Positions 720 through 51,765 of a stretch of DNA of 64,000 bases are shown here, in pieces. The notes beneath the pieces were generated by a model. That model saw only the letters and a program-made list of their open reading frames with translations, made no database searches and was not told where the DNA came from. How positions within the stretch are numbered: position 1 is the first letter of the stretch; each line of letters opens with the position of its first letter. The stretch spans positions 41,602,001 to 41,666,000 of the forward strand of contig NC_043008.1 in the NCBI RefSeq assembly GCF_006345805.1. Direction: 5' to 3'. A program made the position numbers and the translations under genes. This DNA comes from Octopus sinensis (lineage: Eukaryota).

Positions 720-1357
720 CATTGAGTCAAGAAATAAACATAGTTCTCATGTATATTTTATTATGAAGTCGATTGTGTTAAACTCGAATTTTATAACAAA
801 AGTTTCCCCATCACGTCGCATTTTCTTGTAAATTAAAGGCGTGAGCTGGCAGAAACGTTAGCACGCCGGGCGAAATGCTTAGTGGTATTTCGTGTGTCTT
901 TACGTTCTGAGTTCAAATTCCGCCGAGGTTGACTTTGCCTTTCATCTTTTCGGCGTCGATAAATTAAGTACCAGTTGCGTACTGGGGTCAATCTAATCGA
1001 GTGCCTCCCTCCACCAAAACTTCGAACCTTATGCCTAGAATAGAAAATATTTTCTTGTAAATTACCGACTTAATAACTACGCAATTTATATCAATTTCCA
1101 CGATACCATAAATTTATTTTGCTCCCAAAGTCAGAAGAAATATGTCCATTGTAATTAAATCATAAATATATAATGAATTGGTGTGTTTGTTAGCATTATA
1201 TAATGTATTAACTTACATTTTAGTATTTACTTCTTCATTTATAAGACGTCTCATGTGTGTCACGCTTCATGTTCCAGCAGAAGTCAGCCAGCATGGCTGG
1301 GCTCCATTTTCCCTCATACCTGTTTTCCGTTGACGCTATATCTTGATGGAACCTTTC
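720..1357 (-). mobile_element. 3' relic of a Chapaev-like (CMC group) DNA transposon, interrupted by a SINE
   Basis: The minus strand of 1220-1357 translates to ERFHQDIASTENRYEGKWSPAMLADFCWNMKRDTHETSYK. This matches the ERFHQDI..E.RY.G.W...M.AD.CW..KRD transposase C-terminal motif I associate with Chapaev-type elements. A degenerate terminus-like CATTGAGTCAAG lies at 720. The superfamily name is from memory. Confidence 0.65.
836..1048 (+). mobile_element. tRNA-derived SINE-A, tail-1 subfamily
   Basis: A-box-like TGGCAGAAACG, B-box GTTCAAATTCC and central GCCTTTCATCTTTTCGGCGTCGATAAATTAAGTACC. Perfect 16-bp TSD ATTTTCTTGTAAATTA at 820-835 and 1049-1064. Confidence 0.9.
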
Positions 1358-3208: not shown

Positions 3209-4353
3209 TATATGCATGCATAATAGTAAAGCATTAATATGAAATATATAAAAAAAAACAATATTTACTTCGAACAATATATATATATTGGAACAAAATA
3301 GATTATCATCATCATTGTTTATTTGTTACAAACATAGTATCTTCACTGCTCAGGTCATGCATAATTCTTTGGAGATGTTTGAGAAAACTCGATTTCGAAA
3401 ATGTTGGTAGCTGTAGGGATGACGTCTACCAGATGAAAAAACTCTATAGCTTTTAAATTTTTCAACTTTTTATAATTTTTGAAAGTTGTTACCCCCAATT
3501 ATTTTGGTATCTTGTAAGGTTACATATTTTTTATAATAGTGAGGACAATGTTTAAAGTTAGCTATACATCTCAAGTTTTTTATGTTCAGAGTCATGATTT
3601 TTGTCATTCAATTAATTGAACGCAATTACTGAATATACTTTATTTTATAGTAATGGAATTTCTAAGTCTTCTTGGAATGCTTCTGCATTAAAAATAAATA
3701 CAAGCTGGCAAACACAATGCTATGAGAAATTAAATAAATTTTTAGCTAATCGAAATGCTTCAATGATGCCACAAATAAAACCACTAGCTTTAATGGTAAC
3801 TCTTATAAAGTGGGTCATGCCAGAGTATTCACTATTTACGTGAAGTATATTAAAAGTATATCAAGATATGCAACTAGGGTTGATCCTGAAATTTGATAGC
3901 TATGGTTCAAACTGGTGTACCTTTCAACCTTATTGCACCTCGTCACGGAACCTTTGCCTGTTACGAAAATATTTCACCGATGAGGCAATTCGAAATAATG
4001 AACATGAAAGTTATGCATAGACTTTATTTGCATACTAAAACGATAATGTTCTACTTGCGTGATAATGATTATAAATTTCAATACACAGAACACCATTAAA
4101 TAAATTATACCCAAGTAATCGTAGTTATAAACTTGTTGTTGCTTTTATAGTGATTATTAATATTCTTGTGGTTGTTGTTGTTGTTCTTGCTTTTATTGTT
4201 GTTATCGTTTGCAAGTAGCTTCACCAAAGTCCATTTAGTTGCATTAGATCTGAGTTATATCAATAACTGGTTTTCAATCATCCATCCACCCATCCATCCA
4301 TCCATCCATACATACATACATAAATACACGCACGCACGCACGCACACACACAG

Positions 4354-4391
<38 letters not shown>

Positions 4392-4393
4392 GT

Positions 4394-4811
4394 ACGAGCT
4401 GGCAGAAACGTTAGCACGCTGGGCGAAATGCTTCGCGGTATTTCGTCTGCCGCTACGTTCTGAGTTCAAATTCCACCGAGGTCGACTTTACCTTTCATCC
4501 TTTCGGGGTCGATTAAATAAGTACCAGTTACGCACTGGAGTCGATATAATCGACTTAATTCGTGTGTCTGTGCTTGTTTGTCCTCTCTGTCTTTAGCCCC
4601 TTAGGGGTAATAAAGAAATAGGTATTTCGTCTGCCGCTACGTTGTGAGTTCAAATTCCGCCGAGGTCGACTTTACCTTTCATCCTTTCGGGGTCGATTAA
4701 ATAAGTACCAGTTGCGCACTGGAGTCGATATAATCGACTTAATCCGTGTGTCTGTTCTTGTTTGTCCTCTCAGTGTTTAGCCCCTTGTGGGTAGTAAAGA
4801 AATAGGTAGTT
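4394..4811 (+). mobile_element. SINE-A tail-2 subfamily, head-to-tail dimer
   Basis: Full unit at 4394-4620, then a second unit beginning exactly at GGTATTTCGTCTGCCGC (4621-4637; also at 4437-4453). Both units end in TTTAGCCCCTT...TAAAGAAATA. Confidence 0.9.
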
Positions 4812-5254
4812 AGAGCTTTTAAGAAATAAACATTGGACATCCATATTGTGTCTGTGCTTTTAGCTATTTACATCTACAAAAGATGCTCTCTTGAGACGAA
4901 TAAAGTAGTTTAGAAGCAGTTGGATGCGTTAACATCCAACTCAAAGATTACTTACGGGAGACAGCGATTATATATCACCTGAGGAGATACAACTGGATCC
5001 CATTATACAGGTAAACCGTTGCTTAATTTAAGTCATGTGTGCATGTGGATTTATGTTGCATTGAAACATGTGTAGTGTTTATTAAATAGTTGTCTAAACG
5101 TACTCCTTTCTGTTGACTCTAGTCAATTTTTATTTTTCACCCACGATGAATGCCTAAGCCTAGACTTCGAATACCACAGGCTATTTTGTAATTCTACGGA
5201 TGAACGAGCTCTATTTTGTACTCTAATACGTTTCTAACGGTATACACTTTATAT

Positions 5255-5309: not shown

Positions 5310-5344
<35 letters not shown>

Positions 5345-5347
<3 letters not shown>

Positions 5348-5495
5348 GGAAGAGTTTACGAAAAAAGAAAAGACGAAGACAGGTGGTGTACAAAAGAAAC
5401 AGATGTATTAGTATAACGCTCAGGAACAGAAAAAAAGTATTTTATGTTTCGAGCCTACGCTCTTCTATAGAAAGGGACACAGAAAAAAAACAAGG
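5345..5495 (-). repeat. Short interspersed repeat with a hammerhead-like motif (copies also near 7435-7580 +, 37620-37760 -, 38520-38660 +, 54075-54250 -)
   Basis: Shared core GAAGAGCGTAGGCTCGAAAC(G/A)TAAAAG plus a shared ~100-nt downstream flank in five copies. Confidence 0.75.
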
Positions 5496-15858: not shown

Positions 15859-16932
15859 TCCACCACCGCTCATATCTCTTTGAGACATTTAGAAATTCAA
15901 TGTTTCTAAATAAATAAGGCGCTGAAGCCTTTTTATTTACCCTTAAAAACCTGAATCCACATCGTTGAGCGGTGTAGATCCACCAACCCACCATTGTAGA
16001 AAGGTTTATGCCTTATGTATTACTACATCATGGCTTTCAACTACACCACAGCACTACAAGGAAGAATTGAGAGCAGCTAAATAATAAGGAAGAATTTCGG
16101 TGTTTTTCCCGGCACGCTATAGATGTATCCCATCTCCCATATCACACCCTCTGCCTTAGAAAGGAAATAACACTTTGCATATTGTAGCAGTAAAATAGTA
16201 TCTCTGAAAAGACGAGAAATGCAAATTCATTTTTATGTGCTAAGTAGGTTAAGTAATTTCCACTTTGGCCTCTGCATCTTCAGCTATGAATCTACCATAA
16301 TTGCTTGCTCAATAAATTATATTTTCCTGGAAATATTTTAATTTACTGATTGTTATTTTGCGTTATACAGCATTAATTATTTCCGATGTATTCTGTATGT
16401 TAATGTTCTGCTAAACTACCGTCAGCTTAATCGCATTTTCTCCATTTATTTTTGTTTATTAGTTTCCCAGCAGCTTTGTCAATCGTTCTCGAAAAGTATT
16501 ATGCGTTAAAACATATTATTATCCTTTGCTCCATTATCTGAAACAAAAAAAAGCTGATGTAATATTCACTGAACCAAGTTGAAGGGAACGGCCAAAAGCT
16601 TAGTTAAATACTAATAGAAGTTATAAAGCAAAGGCGGCGAGCTGGCAGAATCGTTAGCACGCCGGGAGAAATGCTTAGTGGTATTTCGTCTGTCGCACAT
16701 GTGTTCGTGAAGTAAGAATTGCTGTTTCGTGGTGTTAATATTGTTAACAACTGTTGTTTCTTGTTAAACTGTTGAATAACTTAACTGTTGGAGTTTTCAA
16801 TTGAAAACACTTAGTGCTTGTGGTAGCACGCGTTGTTCATTCCCCCTTTGGGGGGAAGAATGTCGTCTAGCATGGAGCCTACCGTTGGAGCAGAAATACT
16901 TGTTTCTCCTGTTGAGTGAGAGGAGGAAATAC

Positions 16933-18389
16933 ATGTCCGGCGAGGAGCCAACTACAGACAAGGAAATAGGGGTTTCCCCCGCTACAAGAAGGAATAGCAG
17001 AGAGGATAATATATTTGATATTTTGGAGATGTGTCTGAGAGCTCGTCAGAACTTTCACCAGGAGAGTTTCCGACTTTGCCAGAGAACAAAGGCATTGTGT
17101 CGAAGAGAATAATTGATGTGCCTAGCATCCAGATAGAACCAAAAAATGGAAAAAAAAGTTTTGCGTTGGCTGCTGGGGGTGGACCCAGATACTGTCGACG
17201 AATAAAAGCGAAATTATGAAATACAGCAAAATGCTGGAAATAAATGACAACAGTGTGAAAATTGAACCTCCGCAAAAGTTATTACAGGAAGAAAAGCAAA
17301 AAACAATAATTTTCAAAACATATTGTCTACAAAATAGAAAAATTGAAAGAATGTCAGAAGAGAAAATAGAAAAGTGCTTAAAGCCAATATTGGGCGACGT
17401 AGTATTTCTGAGAAGAGGAAAAAAATTCGGAACGGTGGAAGTAAGGTTCACCAATAAAGAAATAGCACACAAGAACTCAGTGGAAACGTTGAAAACGAAC
17501 GACGTGGAGTTAATACCCTATTATATGGGGATGAGGACGTCGCGAATAAAAATTACAAGGGTCCGCCAGAGGTCGAACCTATGTGGTTGTTGGCGGCAGT
17601 CCTAATCAAAGAGGTAGAAAAAATTACTCTCCTCCAGGCTACCGCTACGGAAAACCCACGCTGGGATGGTAAAACAATTAATCTTCTCATTCAAGCGGAC
17701 CCTAAAATAATTCAAACAATTCCTGAGACAATTGAGGTAGGGGAGGAGAACCTCGTGGTGTTTGTTGAGGGCCGAAAAACCTCGATGTTTTTATGTGGTC
17801 AATTAGGCCACATCGAAGGAACTGCAAGGAAATGAAGAAGAGGAGGAAGAGGAGAAAAAAGACAAAGAGGAAGAAGATAAAGAAGAAACAGATGAGAAAA
17901 AAAACAACAAACAAAAGAAAAATACAACCAGCAACCCAGCCGAGAGCGGCGACTACTACAGAACAACGACCAAAAAAGACTGCCAGAAGAGAAAAAGAAG
18001 AAAAAGGCATAATAGCCGTATACACTAAAGATACTGAGCTCATGAGAGACATTCAACTCATAAAGACTGTAAAAAAAAATTGATAACCTTTCAGAGGAAT
18101 TTATCAATTACGACATATATGAAGTCTCAAATAAGACTTATAGAATTCTACAAAATAAGTACAGAAAGACTGTATCTCATTGAGATTAGATTTTAACAGT
18201 CGATATTTCATGGATTACCAGCTCCGATCCCGCGAGAAAAGGAAAAGGTGGAGATTCCCCCTCCACCTGATAATTCTGTGTCGGTGTGTGAGACGGGATT
18301 TTGACAAATCTATTTCCCAAGACCGTCCACCTCCGACCCTGGATAAAAAAAAGGTGGAGGGTCCCCCTCCACCGGACAATCCTAATTAA
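16933..18389 (+). pseudogene. LINE ORF1 (gag-like), frameshifted
   Basis: ATG at 16933. An RRM-like segment (GTVEVRF), then a zinc knuckle that reconstructs across frameshifts as RKPRCFLCGQLGHIERNC (about 17770-17830), then a Lys-rich tract. Confidence 0.75.
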
Positions 18390-18400
18390 ACAGGTAAGTG

Positions 18401-21400
18401 ATGGCTATTCACATTGGTTGTTTAAATGTTCATGGCCTGTTGTCAAGCTGGAAGCAAGGACGCTTTCTGAATGACATCAGGTCGAGAAATTTGGATGTAA
18501 TTGTTGCAACGGAAACCCGGGTGAAGGGGCCAAGAGATCTGCTCCCCTCCTGAACGGCTACGAGAAATACGTTTCTCCGAGTCGGGCGGGAGGTGGGGGT
18601 GGGGGTTGGTCCTACTAAAAAGAAACCGGGTAGCCGAGAAAAAGTTGGTTTTTCTGACCCAGAAGGCAGGCTGGTCGTTCTCGACTTGACATTCAGTTGT
18701 GGCAAGACAATCAGGCTGGTCGCTATTTATGCACCAAACATTATTGGCCCGCAAACTGAATATTTTCGTGGCCTAGGAAAGTTCCTAGCCACGTCGCATT
18801 CACTAGTAGTGTTAGGAGACTCTAATACAATATGTGCAGCACACACAGATTGTGTTGGCTCAAACTCGAACATGAACAGAAAATGTAACACAGGCTTTCG
18901 GGATCTGCTAAGTCAATTTCAGCTAGCAGATCCATATAGGTTGGAGCACCCGAACACTCCACAGTGGACGTGGTCAAATAGTGACGGGTCTACCAGAACA
19001 TATCTAGATAGGATTTTAATTAGAGAAAAAGATAAGTCCATAGTTGAGTGTCCACAGTTTTTTCTAGTCAGCTACAGTGACCACAAGATGGTTACCTGTA
19101 AACTGACGGTAGATAAGTTGCATAGACAGGGATCTGGCTACTGGAAACTCAATACGTCCCTTTTGGCGATTGAGGAGTACAGAAAGCGGATCAAGATGTT
19201 AATACAGAGGGCATTAACAGGTACCATCATAATAACAACAAATGGTGGTACGCCCTAAAAAGAGCCATCAAATATGAGTCTATTAGGTTAGCATAAGTTT
19301 AGCTAAGAAGGGACGTAAAATAGGAGATGGTCTAGTTAAGGAACTAGAAGAAGCCTGGAGGACTGGTAATACAGACCAAGCGAGGGTGAAAAGACTGGAG
19401 TTAAACCAGCATCTTGAAGCCCACCACATGGGAAGTATTACCAGAGCTAAGTTACGTGCAATGGGAAGTGAAGGAATCAAAGCCGCTGGATGGGCCCGAG
19501 TGGTGGAAGCTCGGCAACGAAATAGTTCCTCTATTCGGTCTTTGACGAATCAAAATGGTGTCTTGATAACGAACCCGAGAAAATGTGTGAGGTCTTTCGG
19601 AGTAGTACTTCGCCCAGCTGTTCGGGGGTGACGGCGGCGTCCTGGTGGTGGGAGAGCCCTCGAGGACTTTCTTACCGGGCTGCCGTGCCTCTCGGGGTCG
19701 GATGCGGAGTCTTGCGAAGGGCCAATCACACTTGAGGAGGTGATGGAGGCTTTGGCCGATTGTAAAGCGGGTAAGTCACCGGGACTTGATGGTCTTCCGT
19801 ACGAGCTGTATAATGTATGCCAGACTTGTTCGGGCAACTACTGACTGACGTGTACGCGAACTGGAAACAGAATGGGTTTATCCCCAGATCTGTGCGCCGG
19901 GGAGTAGTGACGTTGGTCAGAAGGACCCGGACAAGGGGGACGTTCTAGAGAATTTCAGGCCCATCACTCTGTTAAACGCAGAAGTGAAGATTTTGGCCAA
20001 GGTTCTAGCAAAAAAGGTTGGCGCGTGTCGCGAATGGTATAGTCGGGGAGGCACAGACGTGTGCCATCCCAGGCAGAACCATTCAGGATACCCTCCATCT
20101 TATTCGCTATACCATAGAGAGGTTTGGTAATAAATCTGGCAAAGGTGGTGGGGCATTGGTGCATTGGACCAGTCTAAAGCTTTTGATAGGGTTGACCATC
20201 GATACCTAGCGACTGTACTTGCGCGGTTTGGCCTGGGCCTTGGCTTCCTCAGGTGGTTTATCGCTTTGTACCACAACATTGACTCGATAGTTCGGGTGAA
20301 CGGTTTCCTTTCGAAGCCGTTCTGCATCAGACGCTCGGTTCGTCAAGGATGTCCGCTTTCACCACTTTTGTATGTGATGGCTCTCGAGCCATTACTGCAA
20401 AGGTTGAGTGGCATCCCGAGAGAACCAGGACTAGAGGAGTTTGTTACGGCTTTCGCGGATGATATCACTATCAGTGTAACCACAGTGGTACGCCTACGTG
20501 AAGTAGGTAAGACTATTGAGGCTTACGAGGAGGTAGCAGGAGCAAAGATTAACCGGCGACGAAAGGAAAAGTCGGCGGCTTGCAGCTCGGCACCTGGGTT
20601 GGCAAGTCGATGCCTTCAGACAGTGTTGTTAGGCGCTGGACGGAGGGACCGGTTAAGTTGCTGGGAGTCTGGTTTGGACCAGGCCTCCAGATAGAGAAGA
20701 ACTGGACGGAGGTATTGAGCAGGGTGGCTGCAGTAGTCAAGACTTGGTCTTGGCGGTGGCTATCCCTGAAAGGGAGGGCGGAAGTGGCCAATGTGTTTAT
20801 CGCATCGGTCATTACCTACCGCCTGACTGTCGTGCCCTGTCCGGATTCGTGGTTGATCAGGTTGGAGAGACAGCTCTTTCGCTTTTTGTGGAAGGGCAGG
20901 TCGCCACTTGTGAAACGCTCTGTCTGCTGTCAAAAGCCTTTAAATGGAGGTTTAGGGATGCCTTGGTTAATGATGCGCGAATGCGTTGAGGTTGAGGCAC
21001 CTCTGGATTCTCCTGGATAGTGAACGGGTGTGGTCTCCGCTGGCCAGACAAATGTTCCCTAGTTCAAGAGTTTTTGCGAACAGGAAGCCTGGTGTTCTCG
21101 TAGACCGAGGTCGAGTGAGGGGCATAAAGAGTGCCGTAAGGCCCTCTTGCTGTTCCGGCGCTCGGGCAACGCCAGCGGTGGGGGTTCCACACGGATTTTA
21201 TATAGTGGGTGGTGGTAGAGTCTGAATGCGACGATGGCCTGGGGTCGACTCTAGGTCTCGGATTTATTCAACTGGACAGCTTGTTTCATCGTACATTCGG
21301 GTTGAGAACGTTGGACAACTTCCAAAAGTCCTTAACCTGGCAATGCTACAGAGGTGCCTTGCCCGTTTGGGATAAGCTCGCAAGACATGGTAAACGTCAG

Positions 21401-21809
21401 TCGCCGACCTGTCCAAGATGCGGTGGGGACAGGGAAACCGTCCCTCACGCTATTGTTCAGTGTCCGGAGATAACTGAAATGTGGCTTATGCTGAACATCT
21501 GTTGTCCGGCGAAGGAAGAGTACGGCTGTCGACTGAGTCAATTATAAAAATTGACCCACCGGGAGTTCTAACGAACGAAGGTAAGAATTGTTTTCTCACG
21601 GTTGTAGCAATAGCAAAGAGGCTGTATGGAATACTAGGATAAAAGGAATTAAGACAGGCAACTTTATCTCTGGTGACAATTTACGATCCTTTTTTTCTTT
21701 TCATTTGAAAAGGAAACTGTGGCTGGAGAAGAGGTGTCTGTCAGAGTGTACGTTCCAAAAGAGATGGAAGTATGTTGCACGAGTGTTGTGCGTGCAAGAA
21801 ACCGTGTGA
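18401..21809 (+). pseudogene. LINE ORF2: APE endonuclease, reverse transcriptase and C-terminal CCHC, with multiple frameshifts
   Basis: Endonuclease: MAIHIGCLNVHGL...ATETR, IYAPN, GDSN, YLDRIL, SDH, GYWKLNTSLL. RT: GKSPGLDGLP, FRPITLL, QTCAIPGRTIQD, DQSKAFDRVDH, VRQGCPLSPLLY, FADD, LGVWFG, LSLKGR, GGLGMP. C-terminus: CPRCGGDRETVPHAIVQC. QGCPLS and QTC.IPGR.I.D are Tx1-like. Confidence 0.93.
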
Positions 21810-22284
21810 ATAGACGAGAAAAAAAAAAAAGGAAAAATAAGAAGGTATCAGCGAGATCGGGGGGCTTGTGGGATCGGAGCGTAACTTGATCATCGCTTCA
21901 TTTGTATTGTTTTTGTACTGTGTATTCCATTCGATTTTTATGTATTGTTTTTATTTTTGATGTCACATTTATGTAAAATCATATCGATTCACTGATCCCA
22001 TCAGTTGTACTGTCCATATCTATGTTTGGCCCCCGGTGGGCAATAAAGAAATTGGTATTTCGTCTGCCACTACGTTCTGAGTTCAAATTCCACCGAGGTC
22101 GACTTTGCCTTTCATCCTTTCGGGGTCGATTAAATAAGTACTAGTTACGCATTGGGGTCGATATAATCGACTTAATCCGTTTGTCTGTCCTTGTTTGTCC
22201 CCTCTATGTTTAGCCGCTTGTTGGCAATAAAGACATAAGAAGTTATAAAGCAATAGGCTGATAAGCTGGCTGAACAGACTGTAC

Positions 22285-22430
22285 TCCGGACAAAAAGTTT
22301 GGCGGTACTTTTGGATTTAATTCTGTTTTCAAATTCCGCCGAGGTTCACTGTCTTTTTCATCTTTTCTTGGTTTACTTGCCCTCTACACCAAATTTCAGG
22401 CCTTATATCACCGATGGTAGAAAGAAAACA
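22285..22430 (+). mobile_element. Degenerate SINE-A tail-1 fragment
   Basis: TTCAAATTCCGCCGAGGTTCAC...CCAAATTTCAGGCCTTAT. Confidence 0.55.
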
Positions 22431-23580
22431 ATAGGAAACAATATTTATGAACTTACAGCATATTTCGGCTGCCTGAACAAAACTTTTCAGTAAATAATCA
22501 TTTTTTTCCCAAGGTTTTCTATAGTATTTATACAAAATGCTTATTGACTTACATTCGTTGCAAGAGTAGTGTTATGCATTGAAATAAACCAGATTACTCT
22601 GATATTTTGGCTTCTGCTACTATGTGGGTTGTCTTCCGTGTATACTTTCGTCTTACAAGATTATATAAGTTTCTTTTAAAAACTCTCTAACTTAGTTATT
22701 CTATTTTGTCCTTCATCTCTGAAATAGTGGACAATTTATTTAATATATAACACAAACTCGAGATTTTCTCTCCTCTATATAAGACACTTTTGCATGTCTC
22801 CTCAAAAATATGCAAAAACCGATCATAACGTTCACAGAAATGTTTTTAGTTGCAGCAGATTGTAACATTTTAGTCAAGATCTGTTCAGCTGCTAGGTGGC
22901 TTTTCTGTGTCTAGTGATATAGAATGCATAAAGCAGTGGCTTATTTGTGCAATATCAGCTTAACTGAAATCTAGTTACTTCTTACACAAATTGGATACCA
23001 AAAGTCTACAAAGATCGACCAGGAATTAGCAACGAGAGAAATATATAATACTTGTTTTCGTGTTTGCGTGTGTACGTGTATGTGTGACTGCATGATTGTG
23101 TTTCTTTTTTCTTTCATTCTTTTCTGTCTCTGTCTCTCCCTCTCTGTACATGTGTGTGTGTTTGTATATGTGTGTGTGCGTGTGTGTTTATGTGTTTCCG
23201 TGCGTCTGTGTTTCTATGTTAAGTGCTTTTAACCAAGTCGTAAGTAAAACTGCATCTGAATGTCAGCAAAATTGAAGATGCACAGAAAGAATTTCTAATA
23301 TTCATCCTTGACTATATTTACATGATTTAGTCTGTTGGTATATGCATATCCAGCGAGACAAATACAGCAATATGACAGTGTTACCAATTAGAATTGTGTA
23401 GGGATATATCGTAGTAGGACATCGTATCCAGTTATCGACTATGTTCTTATATACAGGTAGCACATATCTGATAATTTTGCGTTCAAATGTGCTTTTCATC
23501 ACTCGAAGAATCATGCATACAACTATAACCTCGTATATCACATTTCCTCGAAACTGCAAAAGTTCTGTCCTGAATATACA

Positions 23581-27456: not shown

Positions 27457-27670
27457 GGCTGTCAGCTGGCAGAATCGATAGCACGCTGGGCGAGATATCT
27501 TAGCTGTATTTCGCCCGTCTTTACGCTCTGAGTTCAAATTTCGCCGAGGTTGACTTTGCCTTTCATCGTTTCGGGGTCGATAAATTAAATACCACTGAAA
27601 TACAGGTCGATGTAATCGACTAGTTCCCTTCCCCAATAAGTTCAGGCCTTGTGCCTATAGTAGAAATTAT
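27455..27670 (+). mobile_element. SINE-A tail-1 copy
   Basis: Head, B box GTTCAAATTTC and tail TTCAGGCCTTGTGCCTATAGTAGAAA. Confidence 0.85.
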
Positions 27671-27696
27671 TACTTTTTGTGGTGTTGTTATTATTA

Positions 27697-45624: not shown

Positions 45625-46165
45625 ACCGTGTCAGTTACGACGAAGAGGGTGCCAGCTGATCCGATCAACGGAACAGCTTGCTTCTTAAATTAACGTGCAT
45701 GTGGCTGAGCACTCCACTACCACGCGTACCCTTAACGTAATTCTCAGGGAGATTCAACATGACTCATAATGTGACAATGTGATAAAGACAGAATGTTATA
45801 AAGGCACACAGTTGGCAGAGTCGTTAGCACACCGGGCGAAATGCGTAGCCGTATTTCGTCTGCCGTTATGTTCTGAGTTTAAATTCCGCCGAGGTCGACT
45901 TTGCCTTTCATCCTTTCGGGGTCGATAAATAAAGTATCAGTTACACAATGGGGTCGATGTAATCGATTTAACCCGTTTGTCTGTCATTGTTTGTCCCCTC
46001 TATGTTTAGCTCCTTGTGGGCAATAAAGAAATAAGAATGTGACAATGCCGGCCCTTTGAAATACAGGTACTAGTCATTTTTGTCAGCTGAACGAACTGGA
46101 GCAGCGTGAAATAAAGTGTCTTGCTCAAAGACACAGTGCGTCGCTGGGAATTGAACTCACGACCT
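45625..46165 (-). mobile_element. SINE-D (head Y plus tail Z), interrupted by SINE-A
   Basis: Reverse complement of the 56059-56389 family, split at AATGTGACAATG. Confidence 0.8.
45780..46035 (+). mobile_element. SINE-A tail-2 copy nested in SINE-D
   Basis: 12-bp TSD AATGTGACAATG at 45768-45779 and 46036-46047; tail TATGTTTAGCTCCTTGTGGGCAATAAAGAAAT. Confidence 0.88.
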
Positions 46166-49411: not shown

Positions 49412-51544
49412 TGATATAATCTACTTCATTACTCAGCAGGTATTTCACCCGAACAAGGTCAACTTCGTAAAACACGGAGATATGAAAGTAAATAATTTGA
49501 AGCATTTGGTCCTATTTTATAAAAGATCTTTGTACTTTTGCCAAATTTTGTCACTACAACAGCTACAATAATGATAATATTAAATAACCAGTTGTCACCT
49601 AGATTTCCACAATATACTGTTTGTTAATTATCCCACTTACCTAGTTTAGTACAGACTTAAAATTGCTGGAAATTACTTTCATGTGTTCTGATCATAGAAG
49701 AATAAAATAATCACCAAGAACTAATCTTCTTTTTGCGCTTTATGACGTACATCTCTCTCATAAACATAGCTGCAAGTGTGTCTGTCTGCCAATCTTTCCT
49801 TCTCTCTGCTTGTTTGTAACAGAGAGAGAGAGAGAGAGAGTGGTCTCTCAGCACATTAATGCCAATATTCCTAAATAGAAACAATATAACGTTAAAGAGA
49901 ATAAGCACCGAAAACTTATTGGGTTTCAAACATCCGATTGATGTCAATATTGATTATATTCACACATAGTTTAACAGAAAACAAGACAATAATTGTGACA
50001 CAATTTCAGTTACCATGTATGTGTGCGTGTGTGTGTGTACATGTGTGTGTGTATGCATGTATGTATATGTAAACAGAAACACACATACACACACACACAT
50101 ATATATACACACATGTATATGTATATTTATATATGTGGCTGTATATGGTGGTATTCGATGCACACACTAACACACTTGATTTATATATATATATATATAT
50201 GTGTGGTGTGTGTGTGTGTGTTTTCGTGCGTGTTTTGTGTGTGTGTGCATATATATATATATATATACATACATATGTATAAATATATATATATATATAC
50301 ATATATGTATGCATATATATACATGCATACATATATACATATATATATACATATACACATAAGAAATATATATGTATAGGTATGTGTATGTGTGACAGAG
50401 TTTGTGTGTGTGTGTGTGCGTTTGTGTGTGTGTGTGTGTGTGTGTGTGCGTATGTGAGCGCGTGCGTAAGTGAGTTAGTGAGAGAGAGATAATTGATTTG
50501 TTGTTTAAAAAAAAAGCAGAAACAAAAAATTCCGAATATTTCCCAAAAGATTCTCTGCGTTTTCATGTATCAGCTCAATTTCTAATTTTGTTTAGTTATT
50601 TGTCTCTGCCAATTGAAATTTATTTACATTGTGAAAAGGCCTTAGTGTAAGTGATTCTTAATTGAAAATAAATGTTCACTTTGTCTACACACTTTAGAAG
50701 TGATAGTTAGTTCTGGCTTTCCAGTGGTGTCGATAAACCCTTGATGGATTTGTGCCAGGTTCTTATAAAATTTACCTATCGCCTCTTTATTCGTCATAGC
50801 AAAGAACCTTACGAGCAAGTCTGCTACTGACAATAATATGAAATTTTCAATCCCTTTACCTACCAAATAAGGTAGGAATTAGCATAGGAGTACTGTAGTC
50901 TACCACTAAATAGCTTGTACATCAAATGAATCCATCTATACATCTTAATTAATATGTTAATTACAAGTAAAAGATGCTAAAAACAACTTTTGAAAAATAT
51001 CATTTTTTTCCTTTTTTGTGCAATCACAAATTAAGATGTTAGACAGGAAAGATCACATGAGTCATCAGATATCCCAGGAATAACAAGTATCCACTTCGTC
51101 TTTCTAGCTGATTGCAAGAGCATTCTTTAAATATATCTCTATATAAAACTTGTCTAATGGAAACAATAAGTAATCACAAATCAAAAGTCATCATTCGTGT
51201 ATATTTGTATGCTTGCTACTGTCATTGGAATGCGGCTATGCTGGTGCACCAACTTTAGTAAATCAAATCAACCCAATATTTATTTTCTTTACTTTTGAAG
51301 TTCGACCCTTCCAATATGTCTCTTTTAGCATAATTCAAATACAAAAGTTCTCTTACGTGAGTTCTACAAACCTTAATGGTGTAGATTTTCGTGGAGATGC
51401 AAATTAGGGGAGGTTTAAAAGATATTAAGTTTGAACAAATATCCAGCACACAGAATTGTAAACGGGGTCGATGTAATTGACTTAAACCCTTTGCCCAAAT
51501 TTGAGGCCTTATGCTTCCGGTAGAAAGGATTATTTTTACAGACT

Positions 51545-51765
51545 TTAAGGCGGTGAGCTGGCGGAATCATTAGCAGGCTGGGCAAAATGCTTAGAGACAT
51601 TTAGTCCACGTTCACGTTCTGAGTTCAAATTCCACCGAGGTTAACCTTGCAACCTTTCGATGTCTATAAAATAAATAAACACCAGATCCGCACTGGGGAC
51701 GATGTAAATGACTAGGCACCGCCCTCAAAAGTCCAGGCCTTGTGCTTACAGCAGAAATAATTATT
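51545..51765 (+). mobile_element. Degenerate SINE-A tail-1 copy, preceded by another 3' half at about 51440-51535
   Basis: Head, B box and tail are recognisable. Confidence 0.7.

What the first reader, a model, noticed from the sequence alone, without database searches (positions are those of the whole stretch)
16616..22253. Full-length Tx1-clade LINE inserted at a defined site inside a tRNA-derived SINE: candidate SINE-targeting retrotransposon
Seen: the outer SINE has its own perfect 16-bp TSD. The LINE inside it is bracketed by an 18-bp duplication of SINE sequence (TGGTATTTCGTCTGTCGC / TGGTATTTCGTCTGCCAC; each differs once from the SINE consensus GGTATTTCGTCTGCCGC). Known: Tx1-clade elements with APE endonucleases include sequence-specific families targeting multicopy DNA (U2 snRNA genes, tRNA clusters, microsatellites, another transposon in Xenopus). 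Inference: this family uses a high-copy SINE as its target. One insertion alone does not prove specificity, but the dimer at 4394-4811 is joined at the same base. I cannot check whether this family is already catalogued.
Basis: partly seen in the sequence, partly recalled or inferred. Interest (0 to 1): 0.9.

Follow-up and report, generated by a model that had tools for sequence, protein, structure and literature searches.

The report
Dead LINE nested in partner SINE
A decayed, near-complete L1/Tx1-type jumping gene sits inside a copy of the short element (SINE) that borrows its 3' end, at a spot that was hit a second time elsewhere in the window; this hints at a preferred landing site but does not show a SINE-specific family.

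Summary
A 5,356-bp LINE (16697-22052) lies inside a 231-nt SINE. It is flanked by an 18-bp duplication of SINE positions 47-64, and the SINE has its own perfect 16-bp TSD. The LINE has APE, RT and zf-RVT domains and an RRM/CCHC-type ORF1. It is dead, with at least 8 frameshifts plus stops. "Tx1 clade" stays plausible but unproven: the LINE forms its own clade with unnamed relatives.

New finding: the LINE's last 41 nt, a stem-loop followed by AATAAAGAAAT, match the tail of this SINE subfamily end to end (E=2e-6). The LINE therefore landed in its own non-autonomous partner.

The SINE "dimer" at 4395-4804 is joined at position 47|48, the same site within one base. Two hits at one site point to a preferred site, but microhomology-driven tandem duplication is a live rival for the dimer.

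Evidence against strict SINE targeting:
- Two other partner-SINE copies sit at non-SINE sites, and those two sites share a different motif, AGAA(T)GTTATAAAG.
- Six related LINE loci from another organism have six different 3' flanks.

No other copy from the source genome could be reached, so the decisive flank census remains undone. Verdict: a real nested insertion, a probable hot spot, and unproven specificity.

The parts
16616..16631 (+). Left copy of the outer SINE's target-site duplication, AGAAGTTATAAAGCAA
   Evidence: Identical 16-mer at 22238-22253.
16632..16696 (+). 5' part of the host SINE (positions 1-64), with a box A-like motif
   Evidence: 100% self-match in blastn. nhmmer against the SINE-head model gives E=5e-17.
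16679..16696 (+). Left copy of the LINE's target-site duplication (SINE positions 47-64), TGGTATTTCGTCTGTCGC
   Evidence: 16/18 identical to 22053-22070.
16697..22052 (+). L1/Tx1-superfamily LINE, 5,356 bp, same orientation as the SINE. It is near-complete in layout but decayed.
   Evidence: Pfam finds RVT_1 (E=4.4e-20), zf-RVT (E=3.6e-7) and Exo_endo_phos (E=0.0035, below the cut-off). The best homolog, P0001, is 56% identical in protein. tblastn shows at least 8 frame changes.
16697..17215 (+). Presumed 5' UTR
   Evidence: Lies upstream of the first ATG of the ORF1 remnant at 17216. The true 5' end is not verifiable.
17216..18080 (+). ORF1 remnant (RRM-like region plus a degenerate CCHC knuckle, then a K/E-rich tail), with frameshifts
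   Evidence: Window 17587-17814 aligns to the RRM+CCHC part of the relatives' ORF1 (32% identity, E=1.6e-6). zf-CCHC scores 18.3 bits, below the 20.8 cut-off.
18398..21806 (+). ORF2 remnant. APE lies at about 18398-19230, RT at about 19817-20570 and zf-RVT at 21326-21484. There is an in-frame stop at 18551-18553.
22012..22052 (+). LINE 3' terminal module shared with the SINE tail: stem-loop GCCC-CCGGT-GGGC followed by AATAAAGAAAT
   Evidence: A model built from SINE tails only matches the last 41 nt of the LINE end to end, E=2e-6.
22053..22070 (+). Right copy of the LINE's target-site duplication, TGGTATTTCGTCTGCCAC
22053..22237 (+). 3' part of the host SINE (positions 47-231), with a box B-like motif and the type-1 tail
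   Evidence: blastn 98.9% self-match. 90% identical to the dimer units.
22238..22253 (+). Right copy of the outer SINE's target-site duplication
22255..22432 (+). Older, diverged SINE of the same head family with the other (type-2) tail. It starts 1 nt after the outer TSD.
   Evidence: nhmmer against the head model, E=4e-12. Tail alignment.
4395..4620 (+). Dimer unit 1 (SINE positions 6-231, type-1 tail)
4621..4804 (+). Dimer unit 2 (SINE positions 48-231). It starts at the same site as the LINE's 3' junction. The right flank begins GGTAGTT.
45802..46033 (+). Solo type-1 SINE at a non-SINE site. Its upstream flank reads AGAATGTTATAAAG.

Best explanation
Shown:
- A resident SINE, itself inserted with a 16-bp TSD, was later hit by a near-full-length L1/Tx1-type LINE. 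The event was TSD-forming, as target-primed reverse transcription (TPRT) produces.
- The 18-bp TSD places the bottom-strand nick at SINE position 46/47|48 and the top-strand nick at 64|65.
- The LINE and this SINE subfamily (type-1 tail) share the same terminal 41 nt, a short G+C stem-loop followed by AATAAAGAAAT(A).
- The copy has since decayed and is inactive.

Inferred:
- The SINE is the LINE's non-autonomous partner, recognised through that 3' module (stringent-type recognition). The LINE therefore landed in its own parasite.
- Position 47/48 is a recurrent, preferred landing site for this LINE/SINE machinery. A second event there would be a SINE entering a SINE. In that case the 17-nt TSD homology lets the top strand prime on the cDNA, which trims the incoming copy so that the product reads [1-231][48-231]. 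That is exactly the structure of the dimer at 4395-4804.
- The preference is not exclusive. Partner SINEs also integrate at non-SINE sites.
- The SINE family covers about 4% of the local sequence, so a matching internal site acts as a hot spot rather than as a dedicated target.
For: - Nested structure and both TSDs.
- LINE identity and decay.
- Shared 3' module: a model built from SINE tails only hits the LINE's last 41 nt end to end, E=2e-6. A conserved stem-loop is predicted.
- The same design recurs in six related LINE 3' ends: a G+C stem (CTTGT loop in four of them), then a second stem with compensatory changes, then GAAATAAA. Those related tails match the window's other SINE tail type, and in every locus the best hit lies at the LINE terminus (L113 E=3.9e-6, L110 E=4.8e-4).
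- Same site twice: LINE junction GAAAT|TGGTATTTCG and dimer junction GAAATA|GGTATTTCG. If independent, the chance of agreement within one base is about 3/226.
- The dimer's own right flank, GGTAGTT, again resembles GGTATTT.
- Literature: Tx1-type LINEs often prefer sites inside other transposons, and dependent SINEs share that preference (PMC4494074).
Against: - Only one LINE copy and about five junctions are available.
- Nesting alone is unremarkable. This SINE family covers 3.6-4.6% of the non-LINE window. In one octopus genome (Octopus vulgaris), SINEs make up 11.6% of the DNA (PMC13282606).
- The dimer units are 94.6% identical and share six derived bases. The flank GGTAGTT offers microhomology for a plain tandem duplication, which would remove the second independent hit.
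- The two solo partner SINEs lie at AGAAGTTATAAAGCAA and AGAATGTTATAAAG sites, not in SINEs.
- A loose motif that fits four of the five junctions (RGWAKTT) was derived after seeing the data. It occurs 111 times outside the LINE, and only 3-4 of those are at SINE position 48.
- No significant DNA hairpin is predicted at the site.
- Six related LINE loci have six different 3' flanks.
Confidence: 0.5

Rival explanations
1. Chance nesting with no site preference. The LINE landed in one of many SINE copies by chance. The dimer is a local tandem duplication of SINE positions 48-231, produced by unequal exchange or slippage between GGTATTT (position 48) and the similar flank GGTAGTT. The shared breakpoint is then a coincidence.
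For: - SINE copies cover about 4% of the window.
- The dimer units are much closer to each other (94.6%) than to other copies (86-91%) and share six derived bases.
- The right flank GGTAGTT matches position 48-54 at 6 of 7 bases, which is what such a duplication needs.
- The solo partner SINEs are not inside SINEs.
Against: - It requires a coincidence of about 1.3% between the duplication breakpoint and the LINE's nick site.
- Six matching bases are weak microhomology.
- The unit similarity is equally expected if both units come from one young subfamily.
Confidence: 0.25
2. This is a strictly sequence-specific family, like Tx1L, Keno or Tx1-Mar. Its endonuclease recognises the SINE sequence around position 47/48, so most copies sit there.
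For: - Two junctions lie at one site.
- Target-specific families are common among Tx1-type LINEs, including families that target other transposons (PMC4494074).
Against: - Two of the partner-SINE insertions in the same window are at non-SINE sites that carry their own shared motif.
- The nearest multi-copy relatives show no common flank.
- Membership in the Tx1 clade is itself unproven.
- Only one LINE copy was seen.
Confidence: 0.2
3. A single-event chimera. One reverse-transcription run started on a SINE RNA, jumped to a LINE RNA at position 47, copied the whole LINE, and jumped back to a SINE RNA at position 64. The whole 5.6-kb unit then inserted at once with the outer TSD.
For: The outer TSD is perfect (0/16 differences) while the inner duplication differs at 2 of 18 bases. 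That is the reverse of the naive age order.
Against: - Two precise template switches that recreate an 18-nt overlap are far less likely than an ordinary TSD. The 18-bp length fits the other TSDs seen here (15-16 bp).
- The difference between 0/16 and 2/18 is not statistically meaningful, and one of the two changes is at a CpG.
Confidence: 0.03

Closest known systems
Tx1-Mar LINEs with SINEU in crocodilians, and Tx1L in Tx1D (piggyBac) in Xenopus (Kojima 2015, PMC4494074; Christensen et al. 2000 as cited there)
   Same: An APE-type L1/Tx1-like LINE is found inside another transposon at a defined position. A dependent SINE shows the same landing site. More than one unrelated preferred site can coexist: Mariner-N4_AMi positions 240 and 830 have no recognisable similarity.
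   Different: - Here the putative target is a SINE, and it is the LINE's own tail-sharing partner.
- SINEU and Tx1-Mar were linked through shared target preference and shared U1/U2-derived heads, not through a shared 3' tail.
- Those families rest on dozens to hundreds of copies, while this case rests on two junctions.
- Tx1-clade membership is not shown here.
Keno, Kibi, Koshi, Dewa and Mutsu: sequence-specific Tx1-clade families (Kojima and Fujiwara 2004, as cited in PMC4494074)
   Same: Same domain layout (APE, RT, C-terminal zinc-binding domain). A Danio "pol-like protein" (BAC82621.1), which may come from that study (my recollection, not checked), is among the named homologs at 30% identity.
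   Different: - Their targets are small RNA genes and microsatellites, with near-exclusive specificity.
- In the NJ tree of the RT domain, the window LINE groups with unnamed relatives outside the fish group.
Stringent-type LINE/SINE pairs: UnaL2/UnaSINE1 in eel, and the L1-clade pairs LINE1-1_ZM and L1-1_CR/SINEX-3_CR (Ohshima 2012, PMC3472496)
   Same: The LINE and the SINE share a 3' terminal module with a stem-loop. In relatives, the stem sequence varies with compensatory changes.
   Different: - The L1-clade examples in that paper are from maize and a green alga.
- This is an animal lineage with two SINE tail types, each matched to a different LINE of one clade.
- Recognition of the tail has not been tested functionally.
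Nested or adjacent Alu insertions at A-rich stretches that fit the L1 endonuclease nick site (my own knowledge, not checked here)
   Same: A sequence inside a high-copy SINE that suits the LINE endonuclease becomes a frequent landing site. This yields SINE-in-SINE arrangements without dedicated targeting.
   Different: The site here (TAG|TGGTATTTCG) is not A-rich, and the element ends without a poly(A) tail.

Membership tests
L1/Tx1 superfamily of APE-type non-LTR retrotransposons | ORF2 with an N-terminal apurinic/apyrimidinic-like endonuclease | tested here: met
   Pfam Exo_endo_phos scores only 17.6 bits, below the 24.5 cut-off. However, 18398-19228 aligns over 280 aa to the APE region of P0002, which passes the Pfam cut-off.
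L1/Tx1 superfamily of APE-type non-LTR retrotransposons | Reverse transcriptase domain followed by the C-terminal zinc-binding domain (zf-RVT) | tested here: met
   RVT_1 scores 72.7 bits (cut-off 29.6). zf-RVT scores 31.2 bits (cut-off 27.5).
Tx1 clade (as opposed to L1 proper) | The RT domain groups with reference Tx1 elements in a phylogeny | tested here: inconclusive
   NJ tree on 441 columns with 200 bootstraps. The window LINE, P0001, P0002 and P0076 form a 100% clade, but its position is unresolved. RT identity is 34-37% to fish elements with ZCCHC3-type ORF1 and 27-32% to fish elements, two of which have L1-type ORF1. No labelled Tx1, Keno or L1 references were available.
Tx1 clade (as opposed to L1 proper) | ORF1 of the RRM plus CCHC-knuckle type rather than the L1 Transposase_22 type | tested here: inconclusive
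   zf-CCHC scores 18.3 bits, below the 20.8 cut-off. Window 17587-17814 aligns to the RRM+CCHC region of the relatives' ORF1, E=1.6e-6. The relatives themselves give only weak RRM_1 and zf-CCHC hits. There is no Transposase_22 hit.
Target-specific non-LTR retrotransposon (working criterion of PMC4494074) | One type of sequence is found in more than 20% of the flanks of the family's copies | not testable with these tools
   There is one LINE copy in the window. No same-genome copies are in the protein collection. Exact-match DNA scans returned only unrelated hits.
Stringent-type LINE/SINE partnership | The SINE 3' tail is homologous to the LINE 3' end, and the two are co-terminal | tested here: met
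   A SINE-only tail model matches LINE positions 5316-5356 of 5356, covering model positions 48-87 of 88, E=2e-6.
Stringent-type LINE/SINE partnership | Conserved terminal stem-loop supported by covariation | tested here: inconclusive
   Across five window tails, 11 pairs are predicted and only 1 has a compensatory change. Across six related LINE tails, 5 of 10 pairs have compensatory changes. Numbers are small and no functional test was done.
tRNA-derived SINE | The head is detectably homologous to a tRNA | tested here: not met
   ARAGORN finds no tRNA in the window. Rfam finds nothing at gathering score over the window, and no tRNA hit at E up to 10 on 4380-4830. Box A-like (GCTGGCAGAA) and box B-like (GAGTTCAAATTCC) motifs are visible by eye only.

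The most novel reading that the evidence does not exclude
Target choice in this LINE/SINE system might be carried by the RNA rather than by the endonuclease. Transcripts would read through into the 3' flank of their source copy. That flank would then anneal to matching nicked DNA, so each lineage would home to whatever its master copy sits in.

This would explain why all five 3' junctions in the window fall into two unrelated classes:
- GGTATTTCG-like: the LINE, the dimer junction and the dimer's right flank.
- AGAA(T)GTTATAAAG: both solo SINEs.

The first class would make the LINE's own parasitic SINE a self-renewing safe harbour, with SINE dimers as by-products.
Probability: 0.12. Interest if true: 0.7.

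Novelty: new member of a known kind. Interest (0 to 1): 0.4.

Why it matters
If a genome-wide census confirms the site, this would be a LINE that preferentially lands in the SINE that depends on it. That is a harmless, ever-growing target, and it would also explain SINE dimers and SINE clustering in a SINE-rich genome.

One result stands on its own. An animal L1/Tx1-like lineage has a conserved 3' stem-loop shared with SINEs, and two SINE tail types match two LINEs of one clade. This adds an animal case to the stringent-recognition L1-clade pairs, which the paper I read (PMC3472496) describes from maize and a green alga. I could not check Repbase or Dfam, so the family may already be catalogued.

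Tried and rejected
1. Other copies from the same genome.
- The protein search gave nothing above 56% identity.
- An exact scan of metagenome contigs for the 18-nt tail gave 104 stretches, all unrelated sequence.
- A scan of prokaryotic genome contigs for the SINE core gave one unrelated hit that is not a tRNA.

2. Identifying the source assemblies and the named homolog. Paper searches for GCA_024449705 and for BAC82621 found nothing. That the window comes from an octopus is my recollection of the SINE. It is consistent with 65% A+T and high SINE density, but it was not tested.

3. A structural explanation for the site. DNA folds around position 47/48, and across the junctions, are no better than shuffled sequence (z from -1.5 to +0.25). 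I noted that the tail end GAAATA is the reverse complement of TATTTC just right of the junction, but I found no way this would help priming.

4. An old SINE remnant upstream of the outer SINE. The similarity around GCTTAGT is not detected by the head model.

5. Target specificity in the nearest multi-copy relatives (ENA ERZ21867824; loci L002 and L107-L113).
- Their 3' flanks differ between loci.
- Head-to-tail arrays share one flank, but that may reflect array growth rather than targeting.

6. A nick-site motif. RGWAKTT fits four of the five junctions, but I derived it after seeing them. It is too common (111 sites) to explain two hits at one SINE position.

7. Host genes for context. There are none: every ORF of 130 aa or more outside the LINE is low-complexity sequence.
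Full report
**What is at the coordinates**

The finding's span, 16616-22253, runs exactly from one copy of a perfect 16-bp direct repeat to the other. The repeat is AGAAGTTATAAAGCAA, at 16616-16631 and 22238-22253. Inside it are two pieces of a SINE, at 16632-16696 and 22053-22237. Joined without the material between them, the pieces give a 231-232-nt element. That element is 88-90% identical to other copies in the window.

The two pieces overlap by 18 nt, which correspond to SINE positions 47-64. The left copy reads TGGTATTTCGTCTGTCGC and the right copy reads TGGTATTTCGTCTGCCAC. Each is one transition away from GGTATTTCGTCTGCCGC, which two other copies carry unchanged. This is the signature of a nested insertion with an 18-bp target-site duplication. 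The insert is 5,356 bp (16697-22052) and has the same orientation as the SINE.

**What the insert is**

Three-frame translation with Pfam gives a reverse transcriptase (RVT_1, E=4.4e-20), the C-terminal zinc-binding domain zf-RVT (31.2 bits, above the cut-off), and a weak endonuclease/exonuclease/phosphatase match.

The endonuclease is confirmed by alignment. Window 18398-19228 aligns over 280 residues to the N-terminal APE region of a relative whose own match passes the Pfam cut-off.

Upstream lies an ORF1 remnant that starts at the ATG at 17216. Its stretch at 17587-17814 aligns to the RRM plus CCHC-knuckle part of the relatives' ORF1 (E=1.6e-6). There is no hit to the L1-type ORF1 family Transposase_22.

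The layout is therefore complete: 5'UTR, ORF1, ORF2 (18398 to about 21806) and a 3'UTR of about 245 nt. The copy is nevertheless dead. Following homologs through ORF2 needs at least eight frame changes, and there are in-frame stops such as 18551-18553. "Full-length" holds for layout only. The true 5' end cannot be checked without other copies.

**Which clade**

- The best database relative is an unnamed 912-aa protein on a 3-kb contig of GCA_024449705.1 (56% identity).
- Next come multi-copy families from the ENA assembly ERZ21867824 (about 39%).
- After those come fish elements at about 30%, including BAC82621.1, a "pol-like protein" of Danio rerio.

I built a neighbour-joining tree of 441 RT-domain columns. 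In it the window LINE, P0001, P0002 and P0076 form a clade with 100% bootstrap support. The position of that clade is not resolved relative to two groups: fish elements with ZCCHC3-type ORF1 (34-37% identity) and a fish group that includes two L1 elements with Transposase_22-type ORF1 (27-32%). Membership in the L1/Tx1 superfamily is met. Membership in the Tx1 clade proper is plausible but untested, because no labelled references were at hand.

**A new point: the LINE and the SINE share their 3' end**

The window holds two SINE subfamilies with a common 165-nt head.

- Type 1 comprises the host SINE, both dimer units and the copy at 45802-46033. It ends ...CTATGTTTAGCCCCTTGTGGGCAATAAAGAAATA.
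- Type 2 comprises the copies at 838, 27456, 51548 and 22255, plus a fragment at 51464. It ends ...CAGGCCTTGTGCCTATAGTAGAAAT....

A model built from the four type-1 SINE tails alone matches the last 41 nt of the LINE. The match runs terminal base to terminal base, with E=2e-6. The shared module folds as a short G+C stem-loop followed by AATAAAGAAAT(A).

The type-2 tail is in turn homologous to the 3' ends of the related LINE families of ERZ21867824. In every one of those loci the best match of a type-2 tail model lies at the LINE terminus (L113 E=3.9e-6, L110 E=4.8e-4, L112 E=1.4e-3). Those related tails have three parts: a G+C stem (with the loop CTTGT in four of the six), a second stem whose sequence changes with compensation (5 of 10 pairs), and a terminal GAAATAAA.

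Both SINE tail types thus match LINEs of one clade. The clade appears to use a specific 3' module, which is the stringent type of template recognition. In the paper I read, that type is described within the L1 clade for maize and a green alga (PMC3472496). The inference is that the SINE hit by this LINE is the LINE's own dependent partner.

**Is position 47/48 a special site?**

The dimer at 4395-4804 is a copy covering positions 6-231 followed directly by a copy covering 48-231. The junction reads GAAATA|GGTATTTCG. The LINE's 3' junction reads GAAAT|TGGTATTTCG.

A SINE entering a SINE at this site should give exactly this product. After the staggered cuts, the top strand ends in positions 48-64. 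It can anneal to the same 17 nt in the new cDNA, which trims the incoming copy at position 65.

If the dimer junction were placed independently of the LINE site, it would fall within one base of it with a chance of about 3/226. That is the main evidence for a preferred site. The right flank of the dimer, GGTAGTT, again resembles GGTATTT.

**What weakens the inference**

- A LINE inside a SINE is not unusual by itself. This SINE family covers 3.6-4.6% of the non-LINE window. SINEs make up 11.6% of the Octopus vulgaris genome (PMC13282606).
- The dimer has a second possible origin. Its units are 94.6% identical and share six derived bases that the other copies lack. The GGTAGTT flank gives 6 of 7 bases of microhomology to position 48. 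A plain tandem duplication of positions 48-231 therefore fits, and it would leave only one true hit at the site.
- The two solo type-1 SINEs are not inside SINEs. Their target sites are AGAAGTTATAAAGCAA and AGAATGTTATAAAG.
- Those two sites resemble each other strongly. GTTATAAAG occurs only three times in the window, and all three are at these junctions. Neither resembles the SINE site. Whatever machinery moved these SINEs is therefore not restricted to the SINE site.
- A loose motif, RGWAKTT, fits four of the five junctions. I derived it after seeing the junctions. It occurs 111 times outside the LINE, and only 3-4 of those are at SINE position 48.
- No significant DNA structure is predicted at the site.
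- Six loci of the related LINE families have six different 3' flanks.

**Most likely mechanism**

Shown:
- The event was a nested, TSD-forming insertion of an L1/Tx1-type LINE into a resident SINE.
- The TSD places the bottom-strand nick at 46/47|48 and the top-strand nick at 64|65.
- The 3' module is shared between the LINE and the SINE.

Inferred:
- The SINE is mobilised through that module.
- Position 47/48 is a preferred but non-exclusive landing site.
- High SINE copy number turns it into a hot spot.
- The dimer is a second use of the site.

A speculative extension is that the two flank classes (GGTATTTCG-like and AGAAGTTATAAAG-like) are inherited. Read-through transcripts would anneal to sites that resemble the master copy's flank. 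I give this low probability.

**What could not be done**

The decisive test is a census of 3' flanks of other copies. It needs the source genome. No closer relative than 56% identity exists in the protein collection. Exact-match DNA scans returned only unrelated sequence. Repbase and Dfam cannot be queried here.

**Comparison with what is known**

Tx1-type LINEs that prefer sites inside other transposons are well documented:
- Tx1L inserts in the piggyBac-type element Tx1D.
- Tx1-Mar inserts in Mariner-N4_AMi, at two unrelated positions.
- Other families insert in Harbinger elements and LTR elements.
- SINEU elements share the preference of Tx1-Mar (PMC4494074).

A SINE target would add a new member to this kind. 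The twist is that the target would be the LINE's own partner. L1-Tx1 families are already reported in octopus genomes. I found no target-site analysis in the one such paper I searched for it (PMC13282606).

**Verdict**

- The nested insertion is real (about 0.95).
- The LINE/SINE tail partnership is well supported (about 0.85).
- A preferred site at SINE position 47/48, whether exclusive or not, is probable (about 0.7; non-exclusive about 0.5, strict about 0.2).
- A strictly SINE-targeting family is not shown (about 0.2).
- Interest is moderate.

Noticed in passing
window 1001-1052, 27620-27672, 51711-51765, 51480-51530, 22375-22432; L113:7624-7657, L110:8122-8148, L112:7605-7645: The second SINE tail type in the window (...CCCTTCCCCAA.AAGTTCAGGCCTTGTGCCT...AGAAAT) is homologous to the 3' ends of related LINE families from a different organism (ENA ERZ21867824, 43-50% G+C). 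In every locus the best hit lies at the LINE terminus. Both SINE tail types therefore match LINEs of one clade.
   Followed up: partly
window 16616-16631 / 22238-22253 and 45789-45803: The two solo type-1 SINEs have very similar target sites, AGAAGTTATAAAGCAA and AGAATGTTATAAAG. GTTATAAAG occurs only three times in 64 kb, always at these junctions. The 23 nt upstream of the copy at 45802 (GATAAAGACAGAATGTTATAAAG) also resemble the host SINE's tail plus TSD (AATAAAGACATAAGAAGTTATAAAG). This is unexplained.
   Followed up: partly
L107, L108, L109 (ENA ERZ21867824, contigs ctg101181l and ctg123055l): The related 6.7-kb LINEs form head-to-tail arrays with spacers of about 90 bp. The first 30 nt or so of the spacer (CAGTTGCGTTCCTCCACGTCAGAC...) also flank the last copy of an array. 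This could mean repeated insertion at a regenerated target, or array amplification.
   Followed up: partly
L113:7636-7680, L112:7618-7663, L111:8118-8176, L110:8133-8171, L107:8139-8182, L002:10032-10075: The 3' ends of the related LINEs have a conserved stem (AAGGC/GCCTT, with a CTTGT loop in four of the six). This is followed by a second stem whose sequence differs between subfamilies with compensatory changes, and then by GAAATAAA.
   Followed up: partly
window 22255-22432: The host SINE inserted 1 nt upstream of the head of an older, diverged SINE of the same head family. SINE-next-to-SINE arrangements recur: a tail fragment at 51464-51530 lies 18 nt before the full copy at 51548.
   Followed up: no
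window 18218-18277 and 18327-18383: There is an imperfect direct repeat of about 60 bp (80% identity) in the region between ORF1 and ORF2 of the LINE. Both copies encode a ...PPPPDN... stretch.
   Followed up: no
window 4340-4394: The dimer is 5'-truncated at SINE position 6 and abuts (CA)n and (TA)n microsatellites. No TSD can be recognised for it.
   Followed up: no
whole window: The window is 65% A+T. There are no tRNA or Rfam hits at gathering score. No ORF of 130 aa or more outside the LINE is anything but low-complexity or microsatellite sequence. About 19 hits to the SINE-head model occur in 64 kb.
   Followed up: yes
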